Of a stretch of DNA of 64,000 nucleotides, positions 3,001 through 60,151 are shown piece by piece. The stretch is from positions 1 to 64,000 of the forward strand of contig NIVC01000338.1 of assembly GCA_002269645.1 (NCBI GenBank), written 5' to 3'. A model generated the notes under the pieces. The model was given only the letters and a program-made list of their open reading frames with translations. It was not told where the DNA came from and searched no databases. Positions within the stretch are counted from its first letter, which is position 1; every line of letters starts with the position of its first letter. Source of the stretch: Macrostomum lignano (taxonomy: Eukaryota). The translations under genes were made by a program, and so were the position numbers.

Positions 3001-4389
3001 AGCAGCGCCGAGGTGGCCCGCCTCACCTACGGCATCCTCTACGGAGACGCATTCGTCGATGAGACGCCGCAGTTCAAGGTGAACCCAGTGACTGGTGTAC
3101 TCACTGCCAACATCATTTTCGATCGCGAGAGGCAGGACCAATATCTGTTGAACCTGGCCGTTAGAGATGGTCGCACACCGCCGCTTGAGTCCCGCCTGTT
3201 CGTCATGGTGCAAATATTGGACGTCGACGATAACAAGCCAGTATTCGACAGGTCTAATTACGCATTCAGCGTGGCCGAGAGCGTCTCTGTCAACACGAGT
3301 GTCGGCACGGTGCGCGCTACAGATTTGGACATTGGGGTGAACGCCATCATCCGCTACAGCATTGTGTTGGGCAACACGGGCAACGCCTTCCGCATCGACG
3401 CCGTCACTGGCGAGATTTTTGTCAACTCGCCGTTGGATCGCGAGACTACGGCCGATTATTCGCTGCAAGTCGGCTCAGGTAGTGCCGGCTCAAGCTCGGT
3501 TGCCTCGGTGGTCACGGTTAACATCAGCATTGGCGATGTGAACGACAATGTTCCGGCATTTTCTCAGCCGATTTTCAGCGCCAGTTTGCCGTACGACAGC
3601 CAGTTTGGCTCGTTGATTGTGAGAGTCAGTGCCGCTGACCCGGACTACGGAGACAATGCGCTTGTAGCCTTCTCTGTGGCGGACGACCGAGGCCTCATGA
3701 GCATCGACAGCGCTGGCCGAGTCACGCTAGTGAGCCTTCCAACTTCATCCTCGACCACCCCAGCCACTGCACGTCTTTCTGCATGGAATCCTGTCAGAGC
3801 GTCTGCGATATCCAGCGCCACACTGCGAGTTTGGTTCACCTCGTCCGCCGAGGTCGCGGTCCTGACCGTCACGCAGACCCCGGACTGGGTGTCGCAGCAC
3901 CTGGACATGTACCGAACTCAGTTAGTTGCCATTACCAACACTAGCAACGTGTTCATCACCTCTGTGCGCTACCACCTGAGTAAGGACGGAGAGCCAGACC
4001 TGACCCGAACTGACCTGCTGGTGACCGCGTCTCGACCCGACCTCACACTTTACTCCGGCCCCGAGCTCTCCAAACTGGTCCTATCAGCGATGTCCAGCGG
4101 CGACTCCGCGGCCAATTTGCGCTTCCTGAAACTGCAGGACGCCTCAGGTGCTTCAGACCCCGGCGCCGCTGGTGACGTCGATCTCAGCCTGCCGGCAATC
4201 GCCGCCTGCGTGGTGCTGGCGGTGGTGCTGCTGGCCGCCCTGGGCTTCGCCATCGCCATGTACTGCATGCAGAAAAGCCTGGCTGCCAGGTGCGCCGCCC
4301 AGGCTGGCGCCAACCACCTGCAGTTCCTGAACATTCAGGGAATGCAGAAGCACAACATGGCTTACGACGAGAGTACAATTGTCGGCTGA
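1..4389 (+). CDS. Large cadherin, 3' part (CDH23/PCDH15/Cad87A-like): at least 12 EC repeats, membrane-adjacent non-EC domain, TM, short tail. Clean ORF 1294-4389; 1-1293 carries multiple frameshifts
   Basis: EC-linker and Ca-binding motifs include GINNKAPTF, DINDFSPQF, DENDNPPIF, DLNDNAPIF (these four in shifting frames), then DTNNRFPYF, DVNDRAPEF, DVNDNAPRF, DVDDNKPVF, DVNDNVPAF, with DRE and AxDxD motifs. TM is LPAIAACVVLAVVLLAALGFAIAMYCM and the stop is at 4387-4389. No introns were seen. The 5' end lies outside the window. Confidence 0.93.
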
Positions 4390-13100: not shown

Positions 13101-15508
13101 TCGCTTATCTACCCTCTCCTCGCTTATCCACCCTATCCTCGCTTATCTACCCTCTCCTCGCTTATCATCTACCCTCTCCTCACTTATCTACCCTCTCATC
13201 GCTTATCTACCCTCTCCTCTACCCACTCCTTATCCACCCTATCCTCGTTTATCTATCTAATTCTTGCTTATCTACCCTCTCCTCGCTTATCATCTACCCT
13301 CTCCTCGCTTATCAACCCTCTCCTCGCTTATCTACCCTCTCATCGCTTATCTACCCTCTCCTCACTTATCTACCCTCTCCTCGCTTATCAACCCTCTCCT
13401 CGCTTATCTACCCTCTCCTCGCTTATCTACCCTCTCCTCGCTTAGCCACCCTCTCCTCCCTTATCCACCCTGTCCTCTCCTATCTATATTTTTTCTCTTA
13501 CCTACTCACTTCCCGCTTCACCCACACTTCCCCGTGCCCGCCGCAGGTGCTGAAGCGCTACTGCCTGGAGGCGTTCGACTACTACGCCGCCCCGCTCTAC
13601 TTGGCCTTCTACGAGCTCGACGTGCTGGCGCTTCGCTCGGCGCTGTTCACCCTGTTCGTGGCCGACTGCCTCCGCCGACTCGCCACCGAGCTGGTGCTGC
13701 CCTACTGCCTGCTGCTCGCCCAGGACCGGGCCAGGCGACTCCGCGACGCTGCTGCCAAGAAGGCGGACGCCGATCAGCAGCCTCCTCAGCAACAGCAGCA
13801 GCAGCCGGCACTTCAAGAAGGCGACGCCGTTGATTCAATTCAAGACGCTCGGGCTGACAATTGCGTCACGGACAAGACCCTGCTAGCTGAAGTATCCAGC
13901 GATAAGTATGAGCAGTTCGACGACTACCTGGAGATGTGCATCCAGCATGGCTACATCCTGCTGTTCGCCTCCTCCTTCCCGCTGGCCTCCTTGTTGGCCA
14001 TCGTCACCAACGCTGTGGAGACCCGGTCTGACGCCTACAAGCTCTGCTTTGTGACCAGGTGACCCACTGGGGCTCTGCTTTGTGACCAGGTGACCCACTG
14101 GGGGCTCTGCTTTGTGACCAGGTGACCCACTGGGGGCTCTGCTTTGTGACCAGGTGACCCACTGGGGCTCTGCTTTGTGACCAGGTGACCCACTGGGGGC
14201 TCTGCTTTGTGACCAGGTGACCCACTGGGGCTCTGCTTTGTGACCAGGTGACCCACTGGGGGCTCTGCTTTGTGACCAGGTGACCCACTGGGGCTCTGCT
14301 TTGTGACCAGGTGACCCACTGGGGCTCTGCTTTGTGACCAGGTGACCCACTGGGGCTCTGCTTTGTGACCAGGTGACCCACTGGGGGGCTCTGCTTTGTG
14401 ACCAGGTGACCCACTGGGGCTCTGCTTTGTGACCAGGTGACCCACTGGGGCTCTGCTTTGTGACCAGGTGACCCACTGGGGCTCTGCTTTGTGACCAGGT
14501 GACCCACTGGGGCTCTGCTTTGTGACCAGGTGACCCACTGGGGCTCTGCTTTGTGACCAGGTGACCCACTGGGGCTCTGCTTTGTGACCAGGTGACCCAC
14601 TGGGGCTCTGCTTTGTGACCAGGTGACCCACTGGGGGCTCTGCTTTGTGACCAGGTGACCCACTGGGGGCTCTGCTTTGTGACCAGGTGACCCACTGGGG
14701 GCTCTGCTTTGTGACCAGGTGACCCACTGGGGGCTCTGCTTTGTGACCAGGTGACCCACTGGGGCTCTGCTTTGTGACCAGGTGACCCACTGGGGGGCTC
14801 TGCTTTGTGACCAGGTGACCCACTGGGGCTCTGCTTTGTGACCAGGTGACTCACTGGGGCTCTGCTTTGTGACCAGGTGACCCATTGGGGCCCTGCTTTG
14901 TGACCCGGTGACCCACTGGGGCTCTGCTTTGTGACCAGGTGACCCATTATTTATCTTTAAACCAGACGGAGAGAGTGAAGATTCCTTATTGGGGATTAAA
15001 TTGGGATCTGTGGACCATAAAAGGTGAGATTTTAGTGACTTTCGCTACATCTGTGGATAATTGGTGTTCCTGACTGGAGATTCGCGGTCCGAATAATCCT
15101 CTCGCTCTCCCAAACCCCTCTCGAAGGCGGCCGGTGGCTCCCGCGGGAGGCGCCCGCCAGTCCGCGGCCTGGCAGTCGGTGCTGGCGGCGCAGACCTGCC
15201 TGGCTGCGCTGACCAACGCGGTGATCATCTGCGTGTCCTCCGAGCAGCTGGCGGCCTGGCTGCCCGCCCTGTACGACTCCGTGATTGCCGACGCGGCGCC
15301 CGAGGCCATCATCGCTGCCGGCATGGGCCGCTATGTGGTTGCCGCGGCCTTCATCATCGAGCACCTCATCCTGCTGGCCGGGGCTCTGATTTACCTGTCA
15401 ATCAGCGACGTGCCCGCGTCTGTCAGGGTGGCCTTGGACAGGCGGCTGTTCCTGGCCGAGACGGCCGCGGCCGCAGCTGGTGATGCCGGGGTCAAGAAGA
15501 CTAATTAG
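10110..15508 (+). CDS. ANO10: Anoctamin (ANO10/TMEM16K-like). Exons 10110-10439, 11244-11680, 12159-12495, 13547-14058, 15127-15508 (665 aa)
   Basis: All introns are GT-AG with compatible phases (0, 2, 0, 2) and the total is 1998 nt. Motifs include ELRAYFGEPVALYFEW, WENHPT, FDDYLEMCIQHGYILLFASSFPLA, TNAVETRSDAYKLC and RRPV...W..V. An acceptor at 10083 suggests an upstream UTR exon or a trans-splice site. The ANO10 subfamily call is by motif resemblance only. Confidence 0.9.
10471..11168. repeat. Intronic minisatellite, 28-bp unit CTCAGTTGCTGGGCCAGCCTCCCAGATC (ANO10 intron 1)
   Basis: Direct tandem copies, with a higher-order duplicated variant block near 10497 and 10897. Confidence 0.95.
11706..12123. 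repeat. Intronic minisatellite, 31-bp unit GCGGAGAGGCAGATTCAAGCACTGAGGGAGA (ANO10 intron 2)
   Basis: About 13 tandem copies. Confidence 0.95.
12598..13490. repeat. Intronic minisatellite, about 19-bp unit CTCCTCGCTTATCTACCC(A/T) (ANO10 intron 3)
   Basis: Tandem pyrimidine-rich copies; these explain ORF 12453..13445. Confidence 0.95.
14041..14945. repeat. Minisatellite spanning the ANO10 exon 4/intron 4 junction, 31-33-bp unit GCTCTGCTTTGTGACCAG|GTGACCCACTGGG
   Basis: About 28 copies. The first copy's first 18 nt are the end of exon 4. Confidence 0.95.
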
Positions 15509-16997: not shown

Positions 16998-19847
16998 CTT
17001 CTCTCGCTTTGGCCTCATCTTCTGCTTTGCTGCATCGCAGCGGCTGTCGGCTTGGCCTCAGCCTCCTTAGCCAGCCTATCAGCCTCATCATCCTCAACTA
17101 GTGCGCCATCAATTCTGGTGGCTGTGCCGGCGCGCAACAAGGCGCACTCGCTGGGCCGCGCTCTGGCCTGCCTGCGGCGCCAGCGCTACCCGAAACGTCG
17201 CCTCGGTCTTCTGCTGATGACGGACCACAGCTCTGACGGCTCCGCCGCGGTGGCTGCCGACTGGTGCCGAGCCCTCCGACCCTGGTACGCCTTCGTGCAG
17301 CTGGTGGTGAGTCCGGAACTGTTCTCAATGATTCAGCAAGTAGAAAGCGAAACTCTTAGCAATCCATTTGTTTGCAATGGGAATAAAACCCAACTTAGGC
17401 GCTGAGTAGAAAATAATTGAAGGAGACTGGTCCGAACAGATTGAATAGTGTGGTTGCAAAAGTCCAACGGCATAACAGAGGCATAATCCACCCCAACATG
17501 TACGCAGGCCCTGCAGTAACCCCCTGCCCAGCAACACCCACCCCAACATGAACGCAGGCCCTGCAGTAACCCCCTGCCCAGCACCACCCACCCCAACATG
17601 AACGCAGGCCCTGCAGTAACCCCCTGCCCAGCACCACCCACCCCAACATGAACGCAGGCCCTGCAGTACCCCCTGCCCAGCACCACCCACCCCAACATGA
17701 ACGCAGGCCCTGCAGTAACCCCCTGCCCAGCACCACCCACCCCAACATGAACGCAGGCCCTGCAGTACCCCTGCCCAGCACCACCCACCCCAACATGAAC
17801 GCAGGCCCTGCAGTAACCCCTGCCCAGCACCACCCACCCCAACATGAACGCAGGCCCTGCAGTAACCCCTGCCCAGCACCACCCACCCCAACATGAACGC
17901 AGGCCCTGCAGTAACCCCCTGCCCAGCACCACCCACCCCAACATGAACGCAGGCCCTGCAGTACCCCCTGCCCAGCACCACCCACCCCAACATGAACGCA
18001 GGCCCTGCAGTAACCCCCTGCCCAATGCCATCCAATTAAAAGAAGAGCTCTCAATGGAGCCGCTGTTACGTCTGGCTAACTCGGCCTAAAGTAGCCCAAA
18101 GACGAGTCGCATTTGATCAGTTCGAGCATTATTTAAGTAGCTTTGGCTAGTCACACAAATCGTAACTTAGTCAAGCTTCTAAGGCATTCTGGGGCCTAAG
18201 TTTCCAACCATACTGCTGGCAGTAGCGCTACAAGAGTTTGGCTGCTTTCCCCGCTCTCAGGAGGAGACGGAGCCCTCCTCCTACCCTGGCGAGACCGACC
18301 AGCTGCATTGGCCGGAGGCCCGCATGCGCCACCTGCTGGGCCTTCGTCAGCGAGCCCTGACTGCTGCCACCAGACTCGGCTTCGACTTCCTGCTTCTGCT
18401 AGATGCCGATGCGCTGCTGACCGAGCCGACAACCCTGTCCGCCCTGGCCGCTCTCGGCCGCCCAGCCGTCGCTCCGCTGCTGCTCACCGGCCGGCCGAAT
18501 TCTCTGGCCGCGAATTTCTGGTCAGCCATCGGCCCGGACGGATTCTACAGGCGCGGCCGGGACTACGCCAGGGTGCAGGCCCGCCAGCCCGGCTGGGTTG
18601 GACTGCAGCCAGCCGCCGTGCTGCACACCTGCGTGCTGCTGCGCACCCGGCTGGACGTCGCACTGCACCCTCCGCCTGCCGACTATCCGGCCAGCTGGCC
18701 CATTGACGACCTGCCGCTGTTCTACTGGGTTGCCCGGCGGCTCCGGCCTCGCATTGACAACCGACGAGTGTACGGCTTTTATCCGCCATCTCCGGAGTCG
18801 ATTGACGGCCTGTCCGCAGCCCTGCTGGAGCGGGGCGCCTTCCGACGCCTGCTGACCGACCTGCGGGATCAGCTGGCGACGCCTGTTCCGCATCCTCATC
18901 CGCATCCACATCCGCATCTGCATCCTCATCCACATCCATATCCGCATCCGCATCCGCGTTCATATCCGCATCCGCATCCTCATCCGCATCCACATCCGCA
19001 TCCGCATCCGCATCCACATCCGCATCCACATCCGCATCCGCATCCGCATCCGCATCGGGATCCGCCGCCCGTGTTTATCATTGGCCTCGCGCGCCGTCCG
19101 GAGCGCCTTGCTCGCCTGTCTGCCGCCCTGTCGGACGCCGGCTGGCCTTATCAGCCGGTGCGCGCAGTCGACTGGCGCAGCCTTCGTCGCCGACGCCGCC
19201 GGAGACCGCTGCGGCAGCTGCCCGGCTACCGGGATCCCGCAACCGGCCGGCCGCTGACTCTGGGCGAAGCCGCCTGCCTGATGAGCCATCGGACTGTCTG
19301 GCGGCGAATTCGTCGGCTCCGGCTGGCCCGCGCCATCGTTCTGGAGGACGACGCCGACTTGTCGGCCGAATTCGAAGCGCTGGCGGAGGCGGCGCTCGCC
19401 GAAGCCGACGCCCTGCCCGCCTGGGATCTGCTGTACCTGGGCCGCAAGCCGCTGCTAGCGGGCGCGGAGACCCGGGTGCCGGGCAGCCGCTGGCTGGTGA
19501 GGCCGAACTACTCACACTGGACGGTGGCCTACGTGCTCAGCCTGTCGGGCGCCAGGAAGCTGCTCAGCCTGCGCTCGCTGCCCGACCGTCTGCTACCTGT
19601 TGATGAGCTGCTGCCTGCCGCCTCGGGCGTCAGCCCGCACTTTTGGTCCAGCGACGCTGTCGGGTTGTATGCCGACCGGCTGGCGGCCCTGTCTATCTGG
19701 CCGCTGCCGGTGGAGCCGCACAGGTACACCGGGATGCCGGGTCACCGGAGCGACACCGAGGATGCGCCTCCGCTTTGGTCACCGGAGCGGCTGGTCTTTG
19801 AGCGACTCGTTTTTGAGTCCAACTGGTGTCCGCGGCCTGAGTTCTGA
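16998..19847 (+). CDS. COLGALT1: Procollagen galactosyltransferase (COLGALT/GLT25D-like). Exons 16998-17306 and 18261-19847; the start codon is probably in an unlocated upstream exon
   Basis: Motifs include [16 protein letters not shown]...[80 protein letters not shown] and [19 protein letters not shown]. The intron is phase-0 GTGAGT...CAG. Confidence 0.92.
17490..18025. repeat. 50-bp intronic minisatellite (COLGALT intron)
   Basis: Unit CCCCAACATGAACGCAGGCCCTGCAGTAACCCCCTGCCCAGCACCACCCA, about 10 copies. Confidence 0.95.
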
Positions 19848-20282
19848 GGGCTCCGGCTACTTTTGTACTTTTGCATAAGTGCACATGTACTCCTCTTCAG
19901 CATTTGTCTGCTTTATTAACCAAGGTTTAATTTTTTACATACAAGCTTTGCGGCTAAAGCAAATATGATTTTTATCGGCAGCTGTTCAAAGTACCTGCTG
20001 ATGCGCAGCACTAAAATTGCCTTTGAATTGCCTGTTTTAACTTTAAATTGCATTTCAGTATTATTGTTTGACACCGTCTGACTGGTACCGTTAATATGAA
20101 TGAATTCAACTCGAAATAAACGCGTACAGATGGCCAGTTCAAAGCACTGTAGCGTTATTTAATTACTTAATATAAATAATTCCTTTCTAAACATTTTTTA
20201 CTTTTACTGCGCTTTTCTTTTTGAAGCTACCAAAACTCCTGGAGGTCTTTCGTTACTTTGACCTCCCTTACCTCCCTGACCT

Positions 20283-20318
<36 letters not shown>

Positions 20319-20944
20319 CTCCTTTCTCTGACCTCCCTTCTTCTCTGACCTCCCTTCTTCTCTGACCTCCCTTCTTCTCTGACCTCTCTTCTCTCTGACC
20401 TCCCTCCCCTCATTGACCCTCCTCCCTTCTCTGACCTCCCTCCCCTCATTGACCCTCCTCCCCTTCTGACCTCCCTCGCTATTACAAGAGAGCAGACAAA
20501 TTTTGCCGTTCACTTAGAAGCAATAACATAAGCCGTTAAAGTGCATCAATCATGATAGTTAAGTGACGTCGCTACAGATCCATTTGTCATTTACAAATGG
20601 GAATTACGAGTATTATCTAGGGATTGGGAGGTTTATTGCCTCCCCTTGTAGACGTCAGATGTTACTCAAATAGGATCAGACTGCTCCAGTCCTGATTCAG
20701 AAATTAATAGCCTACTCTGGCAATCTCTTAACCTTGTAGCTGTTTGTCTGCTTTGGTGTGTCGGGGTTTTCTGCCAGGATTTTTTACTTAGGAAGTAGAA
20801 GTGCCAAAGGGAATTGTACCCCAGCAGCTTAACCGAAAAAATAGCAATTTTCCTCAGTAGTAGTACCGCCAATAAGAATTACCCCTGTTGGTAATTCTAC
20901 TGGATCTACTGAAGATACTAAACAGTAGATCAGTTGAACCACTG

Positions 20945-21595
20945 GGGAGAATTCCTTCTAGCAGTATTACCACCAAGGAGAACTCCCCTAGAGGTATTAC
21001 CTCCAAGGAGAATTCCCCTAGAGGTATTACCACCAAAGATAATTCCCCTAGCAGTATTACCACCAAGGAGAATTCCCCTAGAGGTATTACCTCCAAGGAG
21101 AATTCCCCTAGAGGTATTAACACCAAAGGTAATTCCCCTAGCAGTATTACCACCAAGGAGAATTCCCCTAGAGGTATTACCACCAAAGAGAATTCCCCTA
21201 TCAGTATTACCCACCAAGGAGAATTCCCCTAGCAGTATTACCTCCAAGGGGAATTCCCCTAGAGGTATTACCACCAAAGAGAATTCCCCTAGCAGTATTA
21301 CCTCCAAGGAGAATTCCCCTTAGCAGTATTATAACCAAGGAGAATTCCCCTAGAGGTATTACCTCCAAGGAGAATTCCCCTAGAGGTATTACCACCAAAG
21401 ATAATTCCCCTAGCAGTATTACCACCAAGGAGAATTCCCCTAGCAGTATTACCACCAAGGGGAATTCCCCTAGAGGTATTACTACCAAAGAGAATTCCCC
21501 TAGCAGTATTACCTCCAAGGAGAATTCCCCTTAGCAGTATTATAACCAAGGAGAATCCACCTAGCAGTATTACCGCTAAGGAGGATTCCCCCTAG
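20945..21595. repeat. 30-bp minisatellite GAATTCCCCTAGCAGTATTACCACCAAGGA
   Basis: About 21 diverged tandem copies, intergenic. Confidence 0.95.
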
Positions 21596-22167
21596 CAATG
21601 GTAGTGCCGATAAAATTTTATCCAATCTGTAGAACTACCACGTAGAATCCTCCGCTGTAATAGAACAGCCAAGGGGAATTCCCTAACAAGCAATCCTAGA
21701 AGAACTGTAACCAAGCAAAAGTTATTCTAGCGAAGGAAATTACCTCCAGGTGTAATTCCCATGGTCTCAAACGCTGTTGACATGACTCCAGATGAGTCAT
21801 GTTTCACCCTCATCGCCAGCCTGACAATATTCACACTCACAATCTGAGCACAATAGTTGCCAGGCTTATTATTTTACTCAGAATTATGCTCTCATAAATC
21901 GCCAACCCTAAAGAAAGAAGCAGAGCCGATCCCAAAGAGCCGACTTCAGCCAGGCAGTAAAAGGCTGCACCTCATAGGTCCAAGTTTTGGCCGGGCAGCA
22001 GCCCCCTCCCGACGCGCGCTGCATTTGCGTGGAATTTCAATGCACCAGCTGGCTTCGCTGAGCTTCTGCCGCGAGAGACGGTGCGAGTCGGTCAGGCTGC
22101 TAAAATTCATTACCGGAGAGTCCGGCTCAGGTCTCAGCAAGGAGCTCTAGTGATCGGTCGGCTGTAT

Positions 22168-22830
22168 ACAGATCTAGCTGCGTCTACAGGTCTACTCAAT
22201 CTACAGATCTAGCTGCGTCTACAGGTCTACTCAATCTACAGATCTAGCTGCGTCTACAGGTCTACTCAATCTACAGATCTAGCTGCGTCTACAGGTCTAC
22301 TTAATCTACAGATCTAGCTGCGTCTACAGGTCTACTTATTAATCTACAGATCTAGCTGCGTCTACAGGTCTACTCAATCTACAGATCTAGCTGCGTCTAC
22401 AGGTCTACTCAATCTACAGATTTAGCTGCGTCTACAGGTCTACTTATTAATCTACAGATCTAGCTGCGTCTACAGGTCTACTTAATCTACAGATCTAGCT
22501 GCGTCTACAGGACTACTTATTAATCTACAGATCTAGCTGCGTCTACAGGTCTACTTAATCTACAGATCTAGCTGCGTCTACAGGTCTACTTAATCTACAG
22601 ATCTAGCTGCGCCTACAGGTCTTTAATCTACAGATCTAGCTGCGTCTACAGGTCTACTTAATCTACAGATCTAGCTGCGTCTACAGGTCTACTTAATCTA
22701 CAGATGTAGCTGCGCCTACAGGTCTTTAATCTACAGATCTAGCTGCGTCTACAGGTCTTTAATCTACAGATCTAGCTGCGTCTACAGGTCTACCTAATTT
22801 ACAGTTCTAGCTGCGTCTACAGACGTACTC
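22168..22830. repeat. About 35-bp minisatellite CTACAGATCTAGCTGCGTCTACAGGTCTACTTAAT
   Basis: Tandem copies upstream of the first visible channel exon. Confidence 0.95.
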
Positions 22831-22971
22831 TTTCTGTAGATCTAATCTACCTACGTAGATCTAGTTGCGATCTGCGATATCTATAGATCTATACAGTGAT
22901 TACCTATAGATCTGCTACATTTAGATACCAATCTACAGATCAAGAAGAGAATCTACGGACCTGCCAATCAG

Positions 22972-25900
22972 ATGCAGGTGCTGGACATCTGCTTCCACAG
23001 CCAGCCACCCTTCTCCGACTGGCGCCAGCCGCAGCAGCGGGCTGCCAACCTCTCGATCAGCGGCGGCGACATCGGCGACCTCAGTGACGGCATCGAGGGT
23101 GTCTTCTGGGACCTGGCGCGGTCCGGTCTCGACCAGTGCGCCGCTGAATGGCGCGGCCCCGGCGCCTTCAGCTACCGGCTGCACCAGCTGAGCAGCGAGA
23201 GCAGGCTGCTGGCCGCCACTGCCGAAGGCAACTGCAACGTCGGGTTCCCGGCGACCTGGACTCCGCTGATGGACCGGCTGGCCGCGGTGCAGTTCCTGCC
23301 TGTGGCCAGGTCGCCAGGTCTGGCCTTTCTTGGACATTTGTGAAGGCCGATGTTTGCAATTTTACGTCTGAAAGGAAGCCACTGAGCATTAAGAACTCAA
23401 ACACAGATCTTAACTTATTTAACTTATTAGATTAAATTAAGAGATGCTTATTACTGCCCTCAACAATGCCCTTATCAGTGCCCTTTTCAGTGCCCTTATC
23501 AGTGCCCTTATCAGTGCCCTTATCAGTGCCCTTATCAGTGCCCTTATCAGTGCCCTTATCTGTGCCCTTATCTGTGCACCTAGTCGGTTATTTGAAATGT
23601 CCCATCTAATGGGCTCTGCATAGGCCAGCGACGCCCGTCTCCATCAGAACCTCCTCACTTCCAGGAGCGGTCTGGCTGGACACAACTGGCGGCCCGCATG
23701 CTGACGACGGCGCGTGGCAGCTGCGCACCGTGGCGCAGGCCTGGCCGCTGCTGCTTGTCATCCTGCTGTCTTGCGGCTACGCCGGCATCGCCATCTGGCT
23801 GCTAGAGCGGCTGCGCAACTCGCAAGAATTTCCCAGGCCGTTCGTGCGCGGCTTCTGGGAGGGCTGCTGGTGGGCCTTCATCACCATGACTACTGTTGGG
23901 TAAGTAATTTGGTTTGGAATTGGCTTTGCTTGGAAGTTTAGAACCACCCACTCCACTCCAATCACAATATAGTAAATTTCTAATAGCCACCAAATTCTGA
24001 TAGAACCCACCTCACTCTGCTAGCACCCACCTCACTCCGCTAGCACCCACCTCACTCCGCTAGCACCCACCTCACTCCGCTAGCACCCACCTCACTCCGC
24101 TAGCACCCACCTCACTCCGCTAGCACCCACCTCACTCCGCTAGCACCCACCTCACTCCGCTAGCACCCACCTCACTCCGCTAGCACCCACCTTACTCCGC
24201 AACATGCCCATTCAACCCCCGTCGCCCAGCTACGGTGATCGGTCGCCCAAGTCAGTGTGCGGCCGTTTGTTCGCCTTCGCTTGGATCAGCTTTGGCCTGG
24301 TTGCCGTGTCAATGTTCACCGCTGGCATCACTGCGGCGCTCAGCGCTCAGGGCATGCAGCAGTTTGATGACGCCAAACTTATCGATGCGGGGGTGAGGCT
24401 GGTTTTGGTAGTTGCAGCGCATTTTCGCGTGGCAATAATACCTGTGCTACTCATTCATTCTCATTGGTACCCTGCTCGCACTGCAGATGATTGTGCTGAA
24501 CGGATCGCACGAGGAGAGCTTGGTTTACGAGTTCGGTTCTGCCCCTGTTGGTGAGGCGGCTTGAGTCTGGTGATGAAGCTTGGTTGTTCCCTCTCCCTTC
24601 ACGCCTCTCCCTTCACGCCTCTCCCTTCACGCCTCTCCCTTCACGCCTCTCCCTTCACGCCTCTCCCTTGATGCCTCTCCCTTCATGTCTCTTCCTTCAT
24701 GGTCCCTTCATGCTTCTCCCTTCATGATCCCTTCATGCTTCTCGGATCATCGCAGTCGTGCCCACCTGGACCGATCTGGTTTCTGCTGCCGCATCGTCGG
24801 CTTCTAAGGGCCGCCTGTCCTCGCCGTCCAACGACACTCAGGGGATCTCGCAACCTCCGCACGGCGTCCTGATGGAGCATTTCATGTACCTTCACGTCCG
24901 CCAGCAGCACCCGCACCGCTTGCGGGCCTCCGCAGCCGCCGGCGTCTCCCAGCCGATGCTCGTTAGGCGGCCCACTCTGCGGGGCTTTCTCATCCGCGGC
25001 CTGGCCGACAAACTGTCCGAGTGTCTGGCCGGCCGCCTCCTCGGACAGCAGCTCAGCGTCTACGAACGGCTGGCCGGGCTGGCGCACGCGGACGAGGAGA
25101 TCGGGGTGACTCGAGGGATTCGGGTGGGATTCGGGTGGGATTCGGGTGGGATTCGGGTGGGATTCGGTGGGATTCGGGTGGGATTCGGGTGGGATTCGGG
25201 CGGGATTCGGGTGGGATTCGGGTGGGATTCGGGTGGGATTCGGGTGGGATTTGGGTGGGATTCGAGTGGGATTCGGGTGGGATTCGGGTGGGATTCGGGT
25301 GGGATTCGGGTGGGATTTCCATTGGATTCGGGCGGGATTCGGGTGGGACTTCCAGTGGATTCGAGTTGGACTCGGGTGAGATTCGGGTGGGATTCCATGG
25401 GATTAGGATGGGAGTCGTGGGAGTTCATATAGATTCGTCTGAGATCTTATCAGGAAGAGGTCGGCGAGGGCTCCTGAGGTGTTACATGCGAGTGCAGCTG
25501 CACATGATGAAGGCTCAGGCTTCGACTTGAAGGAGAATCCTCAGGGATTTCTCATGATTTAAAAATTTTGTTCATCCTTCGAGATCACTCAGAATTGATG
25601 CAACATCGCGACTTCCCGAGATCCTGGATCTTCTCCGCTGCCGCATGCCGAGGGGAAAACAGAATGCATGCGAACTTCGCTCGCCAAATCCAATCTCTGG
25701 GATGCAAAATTTTCATTAGCGGTCAGCTCTATGTGGGACCATGCAGGGCTGATCTGGCTTCTGTCGCGGCTGTCCATCCGCACTTATTTATCTGCTGATC
25801 AGCTGAAGCTCGCTGCCCCCCCCCCCACTCAGACTGCAGGCCTTTCATCAGCTGTCTAAATCTTCTCGAATTCCTTTTCTTTTCATTCGAGTCTGTGCAC

Positions 25901-26760
25901 TACAGACTGCCAGCAAACTTCAGTGATCAGAATAAGTTATTTCCTGTGTTATTCTTCTTTTCCTAGATTTTTTTCCCAAAGAATCCTGATAATTATAAAA
26001 AAGTTTGCACAAAGCCTCATGCTATGACTAAGGCATAAGAATTTGAGTTGTTTGCTTCACTTTTGAACGGACGGGCAGTGAGGCGAGTGTCTGCGGGAGT
26101 GGGGATCTGAGCACGCTGGCAGTGAGGCAGGTGTCTGAGGGAGTGGGGATCTGAGCACGATGGCAGTGGGGCAGGTGTCTGCGGGAGTGGGGATCTGAGC
26201 ACACTGCATGGCAGTGAGGCGGGTGTCTGCGGGAGTGGGGATCTGAGCACACTGGCAGTGAGGCAGGTGTCTGAGGGAGTGGGGATCTGAGCACACTGGC
26301 AGTGAGGCGGATGTCTGTCCCGCATTTCAGCCACCCGAAGATCCACAGAGCCCGGAGGTGGTGGCCCGCTCCCTCTTCGTTGCCAACCGGCTGCAGCTGC
26401 TGGCGCTGGCGGTCTGCCTGGCGCTGCTGCTGGCGCTGCTGTTCGCCTGGGAGAAGCTGCGCTGGGCACCAAGGAATCCGCACTACCAGTGTAAGACTGC
26501 CGGTTCCCACTTGGCCTTACTGCAGTTTTTCTCGCTACAAGTCATCTTCCCAAATTTCAGACGTGGAGCGCAACTGGAAATACGAGCGTCAGCGCAAAGA
26601 CGCGGAGCTGCAGCACCTGCGGATGCAGGCGCTGGCTTCGCCGAATTCGAGAAGTCGGCGGCTTCAGAGGCTTCGACTAAACCGGGACCAGAAGTCGCAG
26701 CCGCCGCAGCCGCCGGTCCAAATGGAGGCTGCAGATGAAGCTGGTGATGTCTGTGCATGA
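22972..26760 (+). CDS. iGluR/GluR0-like ligand-gated channel with a K+ selectivity filter. Exons 22972-23317, 23665-23899, 24230-24392, 24487-24550, 24756-25105, 26331-26490, 26561-26760 (505 aa visible; the N-terminal signal exon was not found)
   Basis: All GT-AG introns are phase-compatible (1, 2, 0, 1, 0, 1) and the total is 1518 nt. Order is S1-like lobe, M1 (WPLLLVILLSCGYAGIAIWLLE), pore WWAFITMTTVG|YGDRSP, M3 (FAWISFGLVAVSMFTAGITAALS), S2 (VLNGSHEE...GVLMEHFM), an extra TM (LLALAVCLALLLALLFAWE) and a tail. Confidence 0.85.
23464..26315. repeat. Intron-specific minisatellites in the channel gene: 12 bp (23464-23578), 20 bp (24004-24200), 14 bp (24588-24735), 11 bp GGGATTCGGGT (25115-25420), about 44 bp (26074-26315)
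   Basis: Each array sits within a predicted intron and has an unrelated unit. Confidence 0.9.
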
Positions 26761-26949
26761 ATGCAGCTCGAATCGATTCACCAAGATTCAAATTGCTTTT
26801 TTAGTAAAAGCAGAGAAAGCGGTCAGCTTTTTCTTGTTACATGTGCATGTGGCTCGCTCTTACCCAATGGTCATTTCCGATTGATTTGACCTCTCATTAA
26901 GAAAAAACACTGCCATCTTATTCTGTCCTTCTATATCTCTGAGCCGTCA

Positions 26950-27360
26950 ACCCCACTCCCTAGCCCTGCTAACCCCTCACTCTGAGGCACCAACACCACT
27001 CGCTGCCCCCGCTACCCCTCATTCTGAAGCACCAAACCCACTCCCTGCCCCCGCTACGCCTCATTATCTGAGATACCAACCCCACTCCCTGCCCCCACTA
27101 CCCCTCATTATCTGAGATACCAACCCCACTCCCTGCCCCCGCTACTCCTCATTCTCTGAGGCGGCACCAACCCCACTTCCTGCCCCGCTACCCCTCATTA
27201 TCTGAGGCACCAACCCCACTTCCTGCCCCGCTACCCCTCACTCTCTGAGGCACCAACTCCACTCCCTGCCCCGCTACCCCTCACTCTCTGAGGCACCAAC
27301 CCCACTCCCTGCCCCGCTACCCCTCGCTCTCTGAGACACCAACCTCACTCCCTGCCCCTA
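26950..27360. repeat. About 44-bp C-rich minisatellite (CCCCACTCCCTGCCCCGCTACCCCTCA...GAGGCACCAA)
   Basis: About 9 diverged copies downstream of the channel stop. Confidence 0.9.
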
Positions 27361-28109
27361 CAAAGCGACTCTCTTCTGGATCTCCCACTCTTTTAACAGC
27401 CCAGTTAATCCCAAATCCTGATGTACTTTTTCGCAGCGTCAGTCTCTCATCTCTGCATGCGATTTCATAGATAAAAAAGAAAGTTAGTCAATAAATATAC
27501 GCTTTGTTGTAACGGTTATGAAATAAAAAAGGCATAAAATAATTTTTTCATTTATCAAGATACTACTTTACTCGAGTAGCTATAAGTAGAGTAGAAGGGA
27601 CTCGAGTGCAGTTTTATTTTTTTAATCAAACAGTTTTCAATGTGAAGAGTCTCTTAAAAAACAGTTGGAAAGAACAATCTGCGACACGTCTAATTTTCAG
27701 AATACAAAGCTGTAAAATTAGCCAGATGAATAAATAGCGGCTCACATAAACCTATTTTTATAAGCGTCTAAAAATCAACCTTTTGAGTTGAGAAGATCTG
27801 CAAATACTGAGGTCGAATAACAAATAGCAAAGGAGAGTTACAACTATCTGAAAGGGGCTGGTTGGGGAAGTTGTGTTCAATAGCGGCAGCAGGTACACAA
27901 AGAAGACTTATCAACAACAAAGAGAATAAACAAATAAGTAGATTTCAATAAAAACAAGTCAAATAAAATTAGTTATAATGACTGAATTTGGAGCTGAAAA
28001 AATCCTACACTTTAATCTGTCTCTACCTGGGACTTCATTAGAAATCAAAACAAAAATAGTCGACACCAATCGTTAATCACTAAGCCAGTTATCTGTCATT
28101 CACGAACTA

Positions 28110-29540
28110 GTTATCATCAACAATCATCATTTTCTAATGAGCCACCATTCATCATTTTTATAATGAGTCATAGTCATCATTTTCTAATCGGTCATCAATA
28201 ATCATTTTCTAATGGGTCATCAATCATCATTTTCTTATGAGTCATCAATCATTTTCTAATGGGTCATCAATCATCATTTTCTTATGAGTCATCAATCATC
28301 TTTTTCTAATGAGTCATCAATCATTATTTTCTAATAGGTCATCAATCATCATTTTCTAATGGGTCATCAATCATCATTTTCTAATGGGTCATCAATCATC
28401 ATTTTCTGATGAGTCATCAATCATCATTTTCTAATGAGTCAACAATCATCATTTTCTGATGAGTCATCAATCATCATTTTCTGATGAGTCATCAATCATC
28501 ATTTTCTAATCGGTCATCAATCATCATTTTCTAATCGGTCATCAATCATCATTTTCTAATGGGTCATCAATCATCATTTTCTAATCGGTCATCAATCATC
28601 ATTTTCTAATCGGTCATCAATCATCATTTTCTAATCGGTCATCAATCATCATTTTCTGATGAGTCATCAATCATCATTTTCTAATCGGTCATCAATCATC
28701 ATTTTCTAATCGGTCATCAATCATCATTTTCTAATGGGTCATCAATCATCATTTTCTAATCGGTCATCAATCATCATTTTCTAATCGGTCATCAATCATC
28801 ATTTTCTGATGAGTCATCAATCATCATTTTCTAATCGGTCATCAATCATCATTTTCTAATCGGTCATCAATCATCATTTTCTAATCGGTCATCAATCATC
28901 ATTTTCTAATCGGTCATCAATAATCATTTTCTAATGGGTCATCAATCATCATTTTGTGATGAGTCATCAATCATCATTTTCTGATGAGTCATCAATCATC
29001 ATTTTCTAATGGGTCATTAATCATCATTTTCTAATGAGTCATCAATCATCATTTTCTGATGAGCCAAAAATCATCATTTTCTAATGAGTCATCATTCATC
29101 ATTTTCTAATGAGTCATAATCATCATTTTCTAATCGGTCATCAATAATCATTTTCTAATGGGTCATCAATCATCATTTTCTGATGAGTCATCAATCATTA
29201 TTTTCTAATGGGTCATCAATCATCATTTTCTAATGGGTCATTAATCATCATTTTCTGATGAGTCATCAATCATCATTTTGTGATGAGTCATCAATCATCA
29301 TTTTCTAATGAGTCAACAATCATCAGTTTCTAATGAGTCATAATTCATCATTTTCTAATGGGTCTACAATCATCAGTTTCTAATAAGCCATCATTCATCA
29401 TTTTTATAATGAGTCATAATCATCATTTTCTAATGAGTCGTCAATCATCATTTTCTAATGGGTCATCATTCATCATTTTATAATGAGTCTTAATCAATAT
29501 TTTCTGATCAGCCAACAATCATTATTTTATAAGGAGTCAT
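28110..29540. repeat. 25-bp AT-rich minisatellite GTCATCAATCATCATTTTCTAAT(GA/CG/GG)
   Basis: Roughly 55 copies, degenerate at both edges. Confidence 0.95.
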
Positions 29541-30619
29541 CATCAATCCTCATCATTCACAAATAAATCAGTTACCACAAGCCATTATTAATGATCAAAT
29601 TCCGACCCAAATTAAAACGACTCCAGCCAGTCGCAAAAGAATTCGCAAAGCAGATCGCCGAGCATTGACTTTGACCAGGAGCTACAAAGCCGGGAAAAAA
29701 GGCGGGGGTCAGAAGTTGCCGCCAACACAGCAGCTTGATGATCAGGACTTGCTGCCGCCGTTACCGCCGCCTTCGCCAGGCTTCGAATCGGCGGGCGCAT
29801 TCGAACTGCCCAGGCGAGTTCGGCCAAGCTGCTGTACCAGAGCTGCTGTTCGATGGATAGCAATCACTGCGTCTGTGGCGGCCTGCCGTGCAAGTCAAAC
29901 AATTCAAGGGTCATTTTCACACAATTTCGCTCTTTAAAGCCAAATCAAAAAGCCATTGTAAACCCACGGAAAATCCACGGAAAACTCATGGGAAATCCAC
30001 GGTAAATCCACGGAAAACCCGCGAAAAATTCACGAAAAATCCGTGGAAAACCCGCGGAAATCCATCTGAAATACCCGTACAGCCTATCGAACCGATAAGG
30101 TGGCGCTTTGCAAACTACGGTTGTAGGGGGTGCCGCCTCCAGATCGGAATTATACCTAATTAGTAGTTGACCTAAATTCTGTGTCCATCTGAAGCATCCT
30201 GAGAAAAGTAGGCTTGTCCTTTCTGATGTCCTTTCTGTCCTTTCTCTGTCGCTCATCCTGCGTAATCAGACTGTCTACCTGCCCTGGGGCTGAAATCTCT
30301 TCAGTGCCCAAATCAGCAGCGGAGCGTCACACAACTGAAATCAATGCTGCGCATGACAAACAGAATGTAGCTGCGATTTCCGAGGGGATATAATTGTAGC
30401 TTCTTTGCCCTGCTCCCGACTCATTTCTCTTCGCCAATGCATGTCTGCTTGCTCAGGCTCGCTCGCCTTTGTTCTCGCTTCTGTTTCTTGCATGCATAGC
30501 TTTGCGGCTGCAAATAGGAATTCGTGAGTAGGGTTGCGTGTCCCGGGTTGCTTTCTGCTTTGTACCCAAGGAAGAGAGAATAAGATAGGAGTAGAGGATA
30601 AGGGAGAGATAGATGACAG

Positions 30620-32347: not shown

Positions 32348-42169
<9,822 letters not shown>

Positions 42170-58600: not shown

Positions 58601-60151
58601 AGCATGGAATCGAACCTTGCAGGTACTTTGAAGCGAGAGTCACATGCTCAAGCTCAAGTTTCACTTGCGAGGTGACGCAAGCAGTCAACTGAGCTGCAAC
58701 GTTCCAAAACGGGACCAACTCTGCTTAACTGGTATTTTTGATCGGGACTGAAGATCAGCAGAAATGCTGCTCTGCCCTTTGCGGAAAGCTACTTTGGATA
58801 ATCCACTAATCGCTAGACTGCTCAAAACGGCTGTCTTCACTGAATAAGAGGGCTAGCGAGACACAAGCTGAAAACAGTTAGCCGCAGTAATTACAGACAA
58901 GACAGGTCACTGAGACATTCACCTGCGTATCGAATGGGAAGTGCATAATGGTGACCTGACAGGTGGTCTTGAGCAACGCCTGCGGAATCCACAGAACTTC
59001 GCCGCTGCGATCCACTACGACTCGAGCCTCCCTGATCTCCATGGTTCTCTCGTCGGCACTGCTCAAGGTTTTAGGTTTAGAGCAAAGCATTGTTTTAAAT
59101 GACGATAGAAATTCTCTCTCTTGGTAGTTTTTGTATAAATCAACATCAAAAACTGATTGGCAAGCCTCACAAATTGTACAACTTGATGTCCGGCGTCCAG
59201 ATCTGCGATGGTGCGACCCGGATCTGCCGGATGGCGCGGAATTCCGGCTCGGTCCAGTTCTCCCAGGACAGCAGGTTGTCCCGCCAGGTCTGGAAATGGT
59301 GTGGAAGGTTGTCACATGTGTTATTAATCATCATGTTAGATTGGTGTTCGCAAGTCAGGTGCAGCCTCGTATTTGCATATTCTTGAATTGCAGCCTTCCC
59401 TATTCAGTCCCGAGTGTCAAAAGCCAATATGGAACTCACGAATCTCAACCAGCAGTTGGTTCGCAGCATCTGCTTGTTCTCCTCCAGGTCAAGAATCTGA
59501 ATCAGGGCCAGGCCCAGCCGGACAGTCATCACGTCTGAGCTGTTGACAACCGGCCGGCCGACAATGCCCCACTGCGCGTAGCGGCTCAGCAGCTGGGTTG
59601 TCAGGCGCTTCTCCACCGGCCAGCGGTGATCGCCCGGCGACCACTCCTCCTGCTCATCAGGCCTCGGCCGCCAGTCCGACTCGCTGGCGGCTCTGACGCA
59701 GCCTGAAGCGGTTTGAGCACAGCGCATCCTTGACTCAGGAAATTTACATACTGCCGCATACTAAGCTCTATCTGTACTCAATAAACGTCACTTTGCACCA
59801 TATAGCAGGTTTGAGTTCTCGGTAAATACAGAAGCGATAAACACACGGCAATGCTCCTGCAACACAACATGGACAGAAAAAGAACAGCCGGAGGGAGCGG
59901 CCGGGCCAAGTGCTTGAAACTGGTTGAAGCTGGTCACCCGCTGAAATTGCATTTCCTTCGTTCGATTGAGCGATTCAGAGAGCACTGAGAGGGGGGGCAG
60001 AGTGCCCCAGAGCACTTCAGACGGCGCAGCAGTTTCAAAACCTGAGCAGTTAGTCCTCTTGTCCCCGGAGCGCCCTGCATGTGGCTTCCCAGCTCCAGAC
60101 TTCACTTTCAGGTGATCGATGGAGCGACGAAGAAGGCTGGCCGACGAGAGC

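What the first reader, a model, noticed from the sequence alone, without database searches (positions are those of the whole stretch)
22972..26760. Animal gene for a GluR0-like channel: amino-acid-binding clamshell plus an intact K+ filter (TTVGYGD)
Seen: seven phase-compatible exons give S1-M1-pore-M3-S2-M4-tail, the iGluR topology. The pore reads WWAFITMTTVGYGD, with the filter split by the intron at 23900-24229, and M3 reads SMFTAGITAAL. Established: animal AMPA/NMDA/kainate receptors lack GYG and have SYTANLAAF. GYG-bearing iGluR-like channels are known from cyanobacterial GluR0 (K+-selective) and rotifer AvGluR1. Inference from by-eye alignment to GluA2: the alpha-carboxyl Arg (DRLAAVQFLP vs VREEVIDFSKP, codon 23275), the GS motif (NGSHE vs SGSTK) and the alpha-amino Glu (VLMEHFM vs LLESTM, codon 24875) look conserved. 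The side-chain Thr appears to be His. This suggests an inhibitory K+ channel gated by an amino acid that may not be glutamate. Multiple spliceosomal introns argue against bacterial contamination. Unnamed homologues may already exist in invertebrate gene sets; I cannot check this.
Basis: partly seen in the sequence, partly recalled or inferred. Interest (0 to 1): 0.85.

Follow-up and report, generated by a model that had tools for sequence, protein, structure and literature searches.

The report
Animal glutamate-receptor-like potassium channel gene
The window holds an intact seven-exon animal gene for a channel built like a glutamate receptor but with a potassium-channel pore; it belongs to a large invertebrate family (cnidarians to acorn worms) that I found neither named in databases nor described in the papers I could search.

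Summary
Seven GT-AG exons (22972-26760, + strand) splice into a 505-aa open frame. The order is S1, M1, pore (WWAFITMTTVGYGD), M3 (SMFTAGITAAL), S2, M4, tail.

- **Splice model:** three of the six introns, including the one that splits the filter (TTVG|YGD), sit at the same alignment column and phase as in a Nematostella homologue. The filter intron is also present in an acorn-worm homologue.
- **Family:** about 300 clusters score E<=1e-30. All named members are annotated "uncharacterized" or given generic or plainly mistaken names. They come from cnidarians, annelids, a brachiopod, hemichordates and the flatworm Macrostomum. TTVGYGD is essentially invariant.
- **Fold:** Pfam sees only the pore. 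A confident AlphaFold model of a Saccoglossus member (pLDDT 88) matches AMPA/NMDA ligand-binding plus transmembrane chains over its whole length (Foldseek E~1e-13). The window's S1 and S2 are each homologous to the family's S1 and S2 by profile comparison.
- **Ligand site:** The acidic alpha-amino residue is conserved (D/E in 88%). The proposed alpha-carboxyl Arg is one to two residues out of register and is not conserved, even in the closest homologue.

Most likely this is a subunit of a ligand-gated K+ channel with an unknown agonist. No paper describing the family was found. The signal-peptide exon was not found.

The parts
22972..23317 (+). Exon 1 (residues 1-115 plus one base): the S1 half of the ligand-binding-like domain. 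It includes the PPF motif, the invariant C56 and P93, R102 (codon 23275-23277) and FLP (108-110). The ATG follows an AG acceptor and no signal peptide is encoded.
   Evidence: S1 profile against family S1: prob 95.9%, E 5.5e-9. S1 against the family HMM scores 10 bits, versus a maximum of 1.8 in 200 shuffles.
23665..23899 (+). Exon 2: pre-M1, M1 (residues 142-163, 23742-23807), the N..EFPRPF..GFWEG motif, the pore helix WWAFITM, and the first half of the filter (T191 T192 V193 plus GG of G194, 23889-23899).
   Evidence: The TMD segment scores 180 bits against the family HMM.
23900..24229 (+). Intron 2 (phase 2), which splits the Gly codon of TVGYG. It contains a 20-bp minisatellite (24001-24200).
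   Evidence: It has the same column and phase as Nematostella P0198 intron 2. Glandiceps P0002 also has ...ACAGTTGG|gtaagt after TTVG.
24230..24392 (+). Exon 3: the last base of G194, then Y195 G196 D197 (24231-24239), RSPK, M3 (residues 203-232, 24255-24344, including SMFTAGITAAL), and the M3-S2 linker.
24487..24550 (+). Exon 4 (21 codons): the first strand and helix of S2, MIVLNGSHEESLVYEFGSAPV. G254-S255-H256 are at 24502-24510.
   Evidence: Both flanking introns match the 21-codon exon of Nematostella P0198 in column and phase.
24756..25105 (+). Exon 5: the remainder of S2. It includes the conserved acidic residue E310 (24875-24877) in GVLMEHF, RG (345-346, the family's YG), and C359.
   Evidence: S2 profile against family S2: prob 92.9%, E 3.6e-7.
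26331..26490 (+). Exon 6: pre-M4 and M4 (residues 404-425, 26382-26447).
   Evidence: It aligns with the M. lignano P0011 segment 'KSPEGIAKSLFFTNQLHLLVLAFVFAVLFAALLCWERFWWAPRNPDYQ'.
26561..26760 (+). Exon 7: the cytoplasmic tail (NWKYERQRKDAEL...) and the TGA stop at 26758-26760.
   Evidence: The tail motif is shared with M. lignano P0011.
19848..22971 (+). Upstream interval, where the missing 5' (signal-peptide) exon should lie. It holds 17/36-bp, 30-bp and 35-bp tandem arrays.
   Evidence: No convincing candidate was found.

Best explanation
The locus is an intact, spliced animal gene, most likely from a flatworm related to Macrostomum. It encodes one subunit of a channel with the ligand-binding-domain plus pore architecture of ionotropic glutamate receptors. 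An extracellular two-lobed clamshell is made of S1 and S2. It is interrupted by M1, a re-entrant pore loop and M3, and followed by M4 and a cytoplasmic tail. The pore is a complete K+-channel selectivity filter (TTVGYGD) preceded by a WW pore helix.

The gene is a divergent member of a large metazoan family that I found neither named nor described. By analogy with GluR0 and iGluRs, four subunits should form a channel. A ligand closing the clamshell would pull on the M3 linkers and open a K+-selective pore, which would hyperpolarise the cell.

The agonist is unknown. The family keeps the acidic residue that binds the ligand's amino group in iGluRs and SBPs, but it has no conserved alpha-carboxylate-binding Arg. 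A canonical alpha-amino-acid site is therefore not indicated.

Shown here: the gene structure, the architecture, the filter, family membership and the family's distribution. Inferred: tetramer formation, K+ selectivity, ligand gating, ligand class and physiological sign.
For: - **Gene model:** 7 GT-AG exons, 505 aa, GC3 0.80.
- **Introns:** introns 2, 3 and 4 have the same alignment column and phase as in Nematostella P0198. Introns 5 and 6 have the same phase, within 3 and 11 columns. The filter intron is also present in Glandiceps. M. lignano models carry insertions exactly at the window's intron 1 and intron 3 sites.
- **Pfam:** Ion_trans_2 at 55 bits and Lig_chan at 36.4 bits, both above cut-off.
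- **Family size:** 302 cluster representatives at E<=1e-30 and 144 proteins at E<=1e-25. Named sources include Nematostella, Hydra, Acropora, Owenia, Dimorphilus, Lingula, Saccoglossus, Ptychodera, Glandiceps and Macrostomum.
- **Filter conservation:** T191-D197 are 97-100% conserved in 194 members.
- **Fold:** the AF2 model of Saccoglossus P0013 has pLDDT 87.8 and pTM 0.74. Its top 50 PDB matches are all iGluR LBD-TMD chains, with 424-474 aligned columns and E 1e-13 to 3e-12. Every secondary-structure element of that model has an aligned counterpart in the window protein.
- **Window S1 and S2:** each is independently homologous to the family's S1 and S2 (E 5.5e-9 and 3.6e-7).
- **Link to bacteria:** family against bacterial GluR0-like proteins gives prob 99.8-99.9%. 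The shared N-x-x-E-F motif lies between M1 and the pore, and S2 alone gives E 3.4e-7. Those bacterial proteins hit GluR0 and Nostoc iGluR LBD structures.
- **Acidic residue:** position 310 is D or E in 171 of 194.
Against: - No functional data exist for any family member.
The clamshell is therefore inferred through homologues.
- The window's S2 is very divergent. Alone it scores 0.0 bits against the family HMM, barely above shuffles.
- The flatworm branch has lost family-conserved residues: C57, C60, G246, G250 and Y345.
- No Pfam SBP domain is detected in any of 14 members.
- No signal-peptide exon was found, so an extracellular location of S1 is assumed from homologues that have signal peptides (P0004, P0005, P0013).
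- A GYG filter does not guarantee K+ selectivity. HCN channels are an example (own knowledge).
Confidence: 0.6

Rival explanations
1. One reading: a K+ channel gated by an alpha-amino acid, bound in the canonical iGluR manner (Arg to the alpha-carboxylate, Ser/Thr backbone, Glu/Asp to the alpha-amino group).
For: The window protein has an Arg (R102) near the expected place, a G-S pair (254-255) and E310. Position 310 is acidic family-wide. GluR0 and AvGluR1 are gated by amino acids (PMC12332018, PMC11479355, PMC12226733).
Against: R102 is out of register by 1-2 residues: the bacterial Arg aligns with D101, and P93+7 is M100. Positions 97-102 are all variable in 194 members. The M. lignano counterpart is Leu. 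In iGluR relatives, loss of this Arg goes with ligands that are not amino acids (insect IRs; own knowledge).
Confidence: 0.2
2. A ligand-independent or orphan subunit. The clamshell is a degenerate structural or regulatory domain, and the protein is either a constitutive or otherwise-regulated K+ leak channel or an obligatory partner in heteromers with other family members.
For: The window's S2 is barely recognisable. The flatworm branch lost two of the three conserved S1 cysteines and two conserved S2 glycines. M. lignano has at least two paralogues (P0011, P0003). Orphan or constitutively active iGluRs are known, such as placozoan AKDF1 (PMC12226733).
Against: The acidic pocket residue and most fold-defining positions are kept. 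The ORF is intact across seven exons, with strong coding-type codon bias.
Confidence: 0.2
3. A non-selective cation channel (excitatory) despite the GYG signature.
For: Some GYG-bearing pores, such as HCN, are poorly selective (own knowledge). In iGluR topology the pore is inverted in the membrane relative to classical K+ channels.
Against: The full signature T-T-V-G-Y-G-D, the WW pore helix and the following Pro are all conserved as in KcsA-type channels. GluR0 has the same inverted pore and is K+-selective (PMC12332018).
Confidence: 0.1
4. A pseudogene, or an assembly or contamination artefact.
For: No start with a signal peptide was found. The locus is embedded in minisatellites. No transcript evidence is available here.
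Against: There are no stops or frameshifts in 1518 nt. Splice sites are canonical and intron positions are conserved with a cnidarian. All near-invariant family residues are retained. The flanking genes are animal genes.
Confidence: 0.05

Closest known systems
GluR0 (Synechocystis slr1257) and other bacterial SBP-fused K+ channels (e.g. the Nostoc homologue, PDB 2PYY LBD)
   Same: Both have a K+-channel signature (TxVGYGD) inside an S1-M1-P-M3-S2 arrangement, with no amino-terminal domain. They share the N-x-x-E-F motif between M1 and the pore helix, an FTAxxT-type M3, and an S2 that is detectably homologous.
   Different: The window protein has an M4 helix and a cytoplasmic tail. Its gene is an animal gene with spliceosomal introns. 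Its S1/S2 are too divergent for Pfam SBP_bac_3 or Lig_chan-Glu_bd. It has no conserved ligand-binding Arg.
AvGluR1 (rotifer Adineta vaga)
   Same: It is an animal iGluR-type subunit with M4 and the TXVGYG signature. It is the only such animal receptor mentioned in the reviews I read (PMC12332018, PMC11479355, PMC12226733).
   Different: AvGluR1 is described as having the full eukaryotic iGluR architecture and a canonical amino-acid-binding LBD. The window family shows no ATD, although some cnidarian members carry CUB+Ig domains instead, and it lacks the Arg.
Animal iGluRs (AMPA/kainate/delta/phi, NMDA, epsilon, lambda classes)
   Same: The LBD-TMD fold is the same: the best PDB structural matches are GluA1-4 and GluN1/2 chains. 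Lig_chan scores above Pfam's threshold. M4 is present.
   Different: The window protein has a GYG filter instead of a Q/R/N-site pore, and SMFTAGITAAL instead of SYTANLAAF. No ATD is detected, and the ligand-binding triad is incomplete. The family is not mentioned in the text I searched of the 2018 and 2025 iGluR phylogenies; their trees and supplements were not examined.
Two-TM K+ channel pores (KcsA, Lmo2059/NaK-type, KCNQ pore)
   Same: By sequence, the best PDB hits are these pores (E 6.5e-9 to 1e-5), with identical filter and pore-helix features.
   Different: The pore is embedded between two halves of an extracellular clamshell, followed by a third TM helix. By homology the topology is inverted.

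Membership tests
iGluR superfamily (Pfam Lig_chan architecture) | The transmembrane module matches PF00060 Lig_chan above its gathering score. | tested here: met
   36.4 bits against a cut-off of 30.8. All 14 scanned family members match.
iGluR superfamily (Pfam Lig_chan architecture) | S1 and S2 together form a bilobed periplasmic-binding-protein-like clamshell flanking M1-P-M3, followed by M4. | tested here: met
   This was tested on a homologue. The AF2 model of P0013 (pLDDT 87.8) aligns over 424-474 columns with GluA/GluN LBD-TMD chains at E~1e-13. The window's S1 and S2 are homologous to the family's S1 and S2, and all secondary-structure elements are aligned. The window protein itself could not be folded.
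iGluR superfamily (Pfam Lig_chan architecture) | SYTANLAAF gate motif in M3 and a Q/R/N-type pore without GYG. | tested here: not met
   M3 reads SMFTAGITAAL and the pore reads TTVGYGD.
iGluR superfamily (Pfam Lig_chan architecture) | Conserved ligand-binding Arg (alpha-carboxylate) plus acidic residue (alpha-amino). | tested here: inconclusive
   The acidic residue is conserved (D/E in 171 of 194). The Arg is not conserved and is off register in the window protein.
GluR0-type prokaryotic glutamate-gated K+ channels | TxVGYG K+ signature within S1-M1-P-M3-S2. | tested here: met
GluR0-type prokaryotic glutamate-gated K+ channels | A recognisable SBP_bac_3-type binding domain, no M4, and a prokaryotic gene. 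| tested here: not met
   There is no SBP Pfam hit. M4 is present. The gene has six spliceosomal introns and animal neighbours.
GluR0-type prokaryotic glutamate-gated K+ channels | Glutamate or amino-acid gating and K+ selectivity. | not testable with these tools
   This needs electrophysiology.
AvGluR1-type eukaryotic K+-signature iGluR | ATD plus a canonical LBD plus TXVGYG plus M4. | tested here: inconclusive
   The TXVGYG signature and M4 are present. No ATD-type domain appears in the model or in homologues, but the 5' end of the gene is unresolved. No AvGluR1 sequence was available for direct comparison.
K+ channel pore superfamily (Pfam Ion_trans_2) | HMM match above threshold, and the T-x-G-Y-G-D filter with a pore helix. 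| tested here: met
   55 bits against a cut-off of 22.5. PDB K+ channel hits confirm the pore.
Unnamed metazoan LBD-K+ channel family (Nematostella XP_032231243, Saccoglossus XP_006819198, etc.) | A full-length match to the family profile, including the EFPRPF..G.xEG.WW..TMTTVGYGD core, S1 PP(Y/F) and P93, S2 G306-L-x-D/E310, and shared intron positions. | tested here: met
   221 bits against an HMM built without flatworms. Conserved positions are retained. Three introns are identical in column and phase to Nematostella.

The most novel reading that the evidence does not exclude
This gene flags an unrecognised class of animal ionotropic receptors. The class would be ligand-gated, K+-selective channels of iGluR architecture that lack the amino-terminal domain; in some cnidarians CUB and Ig domains take its place. 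It would have been present in the cnidarian-bilaterian ancestor, expanded in cnidarians, and retained in annelids, brachiopods, flatworms and hemichordates. Such channels would provide fast K+-based inhibition or chemosensation, gated by a ligand that is not a canonical alpha-amino acid.
Probability: 0.4. Interest if true: 0.85.

Novelty: new variant of a known kind. Interest (0 to 1): 0.68.

Why it matters
Fast inhibition in animals is attributed to Cl- channels of the Cys-loop family. Ionotropic K+-selective receptors are known only from bacteria (GluR0) and one rotifer protein (AvGluR1). If this family works as its sequence suggests, many marine invertebrates would have a second, K+-based ionotropic inhibitory or chemosensory system.

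It would also bear on the old question of how iGluRs arose from a K+ pore fused to a binding protein. The family looks like a living intermediate between the bacterial and animal forms: it has a GluR0-like pore and M3, has already gained M4, and has no ATD. The cloned homologues (Nematostella, Hydractinia, Saccoglossus) make this directly testable. A small ligand-gated K+ channel would also be attractive as a silencing tool.

Tried and rejected
I used homologues plus exon-wise rows instead.
2. Exon 5 and exon 6 fragments misaligned as separate rows and were dropped.
3. The first AF2 run, on Glandiceps P0002 with a 15-row alignment, gave pLDDT 56 and an unusable S1. Its Foldseek hits were already iGluRs, but at TM-scores (normalised by query length) of 0.13-0.18. 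The 125-row run superseded it.
4. The second homologue search, with an alignment containing low-complexity tails, returned nothing new.
5. Pfam and PDB sequence searches detect only the pore. No SBP or LBD hit was found.
6. Family S1 alone against bacterial S1 by hhalign is not significant (E 0.05).
7. The search for a signal-peptide exon in 19850-22971 gave only AT-rich, non-coding-like candidates.
8. Seven literature searches and six within-paper term searches found no description of the family.
9. Bacterial contamination or horizontal transfer is rejected, because of the introns shared with cnidarians and the animal flanking genes.
Full report
**1. The observation**

Reading 22000-27500 and translating in three frames shows GC-rich coding blocks separated by minisatellite-filled spacers. 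I enumerated donor/acceptor pairs. This gives one consistent model of seven exons:
- 22972-23317
- 23665-23899
- 24230-24392
- 24487-24550
- 24756-25105
- 26331-26490
- 26561-26760

All introns are GT-AG and the phases are compatible. The CDS is 1518 nt (505 aa). Exon GC is 0.66, GC3 is 0.80 and intron GC is 0.52.

The pore reads WWAFITMTTVGYGD. The intron at 23900-24229 splits the Gly194 codon (GG|C). M3 reads SMFTAGITAAL.

**2. Comparative support for the splice model**

No transcripts were available, so I used gene structures of homologues. I compared the window model with the NCBI-annotated Nematostella gene for P0198 (locus L003).
- Introns 2, 3 and 4 fall at the same alignment column and in the same phase: the filter intron in phase 2, the M3-linker/S2 intron in phase 0, and the end of the 21-codon exon in phase 1.
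- Introns 5 and 6 have the same phase, within 3 and 11 columns.
- Intron 1 differs.

The acorn worm Glandiceps (L002) also has ...ACAGTTGG|gtaagt after TTVG. The M. lignano protein models carry spurious insertions exactly at the window's intron 1 and intron 3 sites, as expected from retained introns. An intron inside the selectivity filter, shared by a cnidarian, a hemichordate and this gene, is strong evidence for the model and for an old animal gene.

**3. What the protein is**

Pfam finds only the pore: Ion_trans_2 at 55 bits and Lig_chan at 36.4 bits, both above threshold. There is no binding-protein domain. PDB sequence hits are K+ channel pores only.

Homologue searches show that the protein is not isolated.
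- The closest relatives are two chimeric Macrostomum lignano models: 45% identity for P0011 and 39% for P0001. P0011 covers exons 1-7, including M4 and the NWKYERQ tail.
- Next come hemichordate proteins at about 28-31% identity.
- An exhaustive profile search found 302 cluster representatives at E<=1e-30, mostly 430-510 aa and full-length.
- A cleaned profile retrieved 144 proteins at E<=1e-25.

The named members come from these groups:

| Group | Genera |
|---|---|
| Cnidaria | Nematostella, Actinia, Exaiptasia, Acropora, Porites, Stylophora, Oculina, Montipora, Xenia, Dendronephthya, Paramuricea, Hydra, Hydractinia, Clytia, Rhopilema |
| Annelida | Owenia, Dimorphilus |
| Brachiopoda | Lingula |
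| Hemichordata | Saccoglossus, Ptychodera, Glandiceps |
| Platyhelminthes | Macrostomum |

All are annotated as uncharacterized or hypothetical proteins, as "Potassium channel domain-containing protein", or with names that do not fit the family, such as Cubilin, Kv subfamily F and SGF29 C-terminal domain-containing protein. A cnidarian subgroup of 680-870 aa carries CUB and Ig domains in front.

Across 194 aligned members the filter T-T-V-G-Y-G-D is 97-100% conserved. So are the WW pore helix, the EFPR.F..G..EG motif, and an FTAxxT-type M3.

**4. Is there a clamshell?**

Sequence methods alone are weak here.
- No member hits SBP_bac_3 or Lig_chan-Glu_bd.
- The window's S2 alone scores 0.0 bits against the family HMM.

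Profile and structure methods settle the question.
- **Link to bacteria:** the family profile aligns with bacterial SBP_bac_3+Lig_chan proteins at prob 99.8-99.9%, running from M1 through the pore and M3 into S2. S2 alone gives prob 93% and E 3.4e-7. S1 alone is not significant. Those bacterial proteins are genuine GluR0 relatives: their best PDB hits are the Nostoc iGluR LBD 2PYY, GlnBP, GLR3.4, Slr1257 and GluA2.
- **Structure:** with a 125-row alignment, AlphaFold2 models the Saccoglossus member P0013 at pLDDT 87.8 and pTM 0.74, including an alpha/beta S1 and S2. Foldseek against the PDB returns only iGluR LBD-TMD chains in the top 50 (GluA1-4, GluN1/2). They have 424-474 aligned columns for a 440-aa query, E 1e-13 to 3e-12, and TM 0.35-0.50, as expected for flexible multi-domain chains.
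- **The window protein:** paired with its M. lignano homologue, the window's S1 and S2 are each independently homologous to the family's S1 (prob 95.9%, E 5.5e-9) and S2 (prob 92.9%, E 3.6e-7). Every secondary-structure element of the P0013 model has an aligned counterpart. The only differences are loop insertions, at residues 23-37 and 281-289.

This step is therefore an inference through homologues.

**5. The ligand site**

|---|---|---|---|
| Acidic alpha-amino residue | E310 in GVLMEHF | D 156, E 15, N 11 | Conserved family-wide; aligns with the bacterial VYDEP Asp |
| G-S pair | 254-255 | S 78, T 30 in one subfamily; the other has (K/R)HR | Partly conserved |
| Alpha-carboxyl Arg | R102 | T 32, K 25, E 23, R 21... 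| Not supported |

On the Arg: in the profile alignment the bacterial binding Arg falls on D101. Counting from the invariant P93, as in GluA2 P478 to R485 (own knowledge), it would fall on M100. All positions 97-102 are variable. The M. lignano residue is Leu.

Canonical alpha-amino-acid binding is therefore not a family property. A ligand with an amino or cationic group is plausible but unproven. The flatworm branch has also lost conserved C57, C60, G246, G250 and Y345, which leaves room for an orphan or auxiliary role.

**6. Context**

The window is animal DNA. It contains:
- a cadherin-repeat gene (290-4389), an anoctamin exon (13547-14062) and a GT25 glycosyltransferase (18324-19847);
- a CaMK-like kinase on the minus strand (about 32.8-38.8 kb);
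- an nAChR-like gene on the minus strand (52.6-59.7 kb).

The antisense of that kinase is fused to the C-terminus of the M. lignano channel models. The channel-kinase neighbourhood is therefore shared. This points to a flatworm related to Macrostomum as the source, which is an inference.

No signal-peptide exon was found upstream. Homologues P0004, P0005 and P0013 have signal peptides, so one is expected.

**7. Comparison with what is known, and novelty**

Reviews describe GluR0 as a bacterial, K+-selective, glutamate-gated channel without M4 or an ATD. They describe AvGluR1 as the eukaryotic iGluR with a TXVGYG signature (PMC12332018, PMC11479355, PMC12226733). The searched text of the 2018 and 2025 metazoan and eukaryotic iGluR phylogenies recognises AKDF, NMDA, epsilon and lambda classes and does not mention a K+-filter clade in cnidarians or bilaterians. 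Seven full-text searches found no paper on this family. Subscription journals are not covered.

The gene works like a GluR0-type channel but fails GluR0 membership: it has M4, introns and no recognisable SBP domain. It also fails classical iGluR hallmarks: it lacks SYTANLAAF, a Q/R/N pore and the Arg. I file it as a new variant of a known kind, and as a divergent member of a large animal family for which I found no name or description.

**8. Verdict**

The architecture and the gene model are solid, at about 0.9. A function as a ligand-gated K+ channel is the best-supported mechanism, at about 0.6 overall.

Noticed in passing
window 20259-29542 (arrays at 20259-20477, 20946-21597, 22167-22822, 23447-23577, 24001-24200, 24590-24750, 25115-25417, 26074-26317, 26935-27358, 28117-29542): Every intron of the channel gene, its upstream region and its 3' flank contain a different minisatellite, with periods of 11 to 44 bp and up to 57 copies. 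Long spurious ORFs elsewhere in the window are read-throughs of similar arrays.
   Followed up: partly
window 32800-33130 and 38440-38820, minus strand: These are exons of a CaMK-like Ser/Thr kinase (HRDLK catalytic loop, C-lobe). Their antisense translation matches the junk C-terminus of the M. lignano channel models P0001 and P0011. This indicates conserved channel-kinase microsynteny and a mis-fused gene model in M. lignano.
   Followed up: partly
window 52634-59727, minus strand: This is a nicotinic-receptor-like Cys-loop channel gene. Recognisable exons cover the N-terminal ligand-binding domain, the Cys-loop (FPFDTQ), M1, M2 and M4. One intron (55.6-57.9 kb) is filled by a tandem array of a short unit (11-codon periodicity in the ORF translation).
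   Followed up: partly
window 290-4389 (+), 13547-14062 (+), 18324-19847 (+): A cadherin-repeat protein has a 1031-aa open exon (Pfam Cadherin 293 bits). There is also an anoctamin exon, and a GT25 glycosyltransferase ORF containing a long His-Pro dipeptide run.
   Followed up: partly
related proteins P0096, P0209-P0240, not in the window: A cnidarian subgroup of the family has CUB and Ig (or fn3) domains fused N-terminally, where iGluRs have their amino-terminal domain. CUB domains are otherwise known from Neto auxiliary subunits of kainate receptors.
   Followed up: no
related proteins P0001, P0011, P0003 (M. lignano): The public M. lignano models of this family are chimeric. They carry an SGF29 Tudor domain at the N-terminus, retained introns, and an antisense kinase at the C-terminus. 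P0003 shows GYGG instead of GYGD. All need re-annotation.
   Followed up: partly
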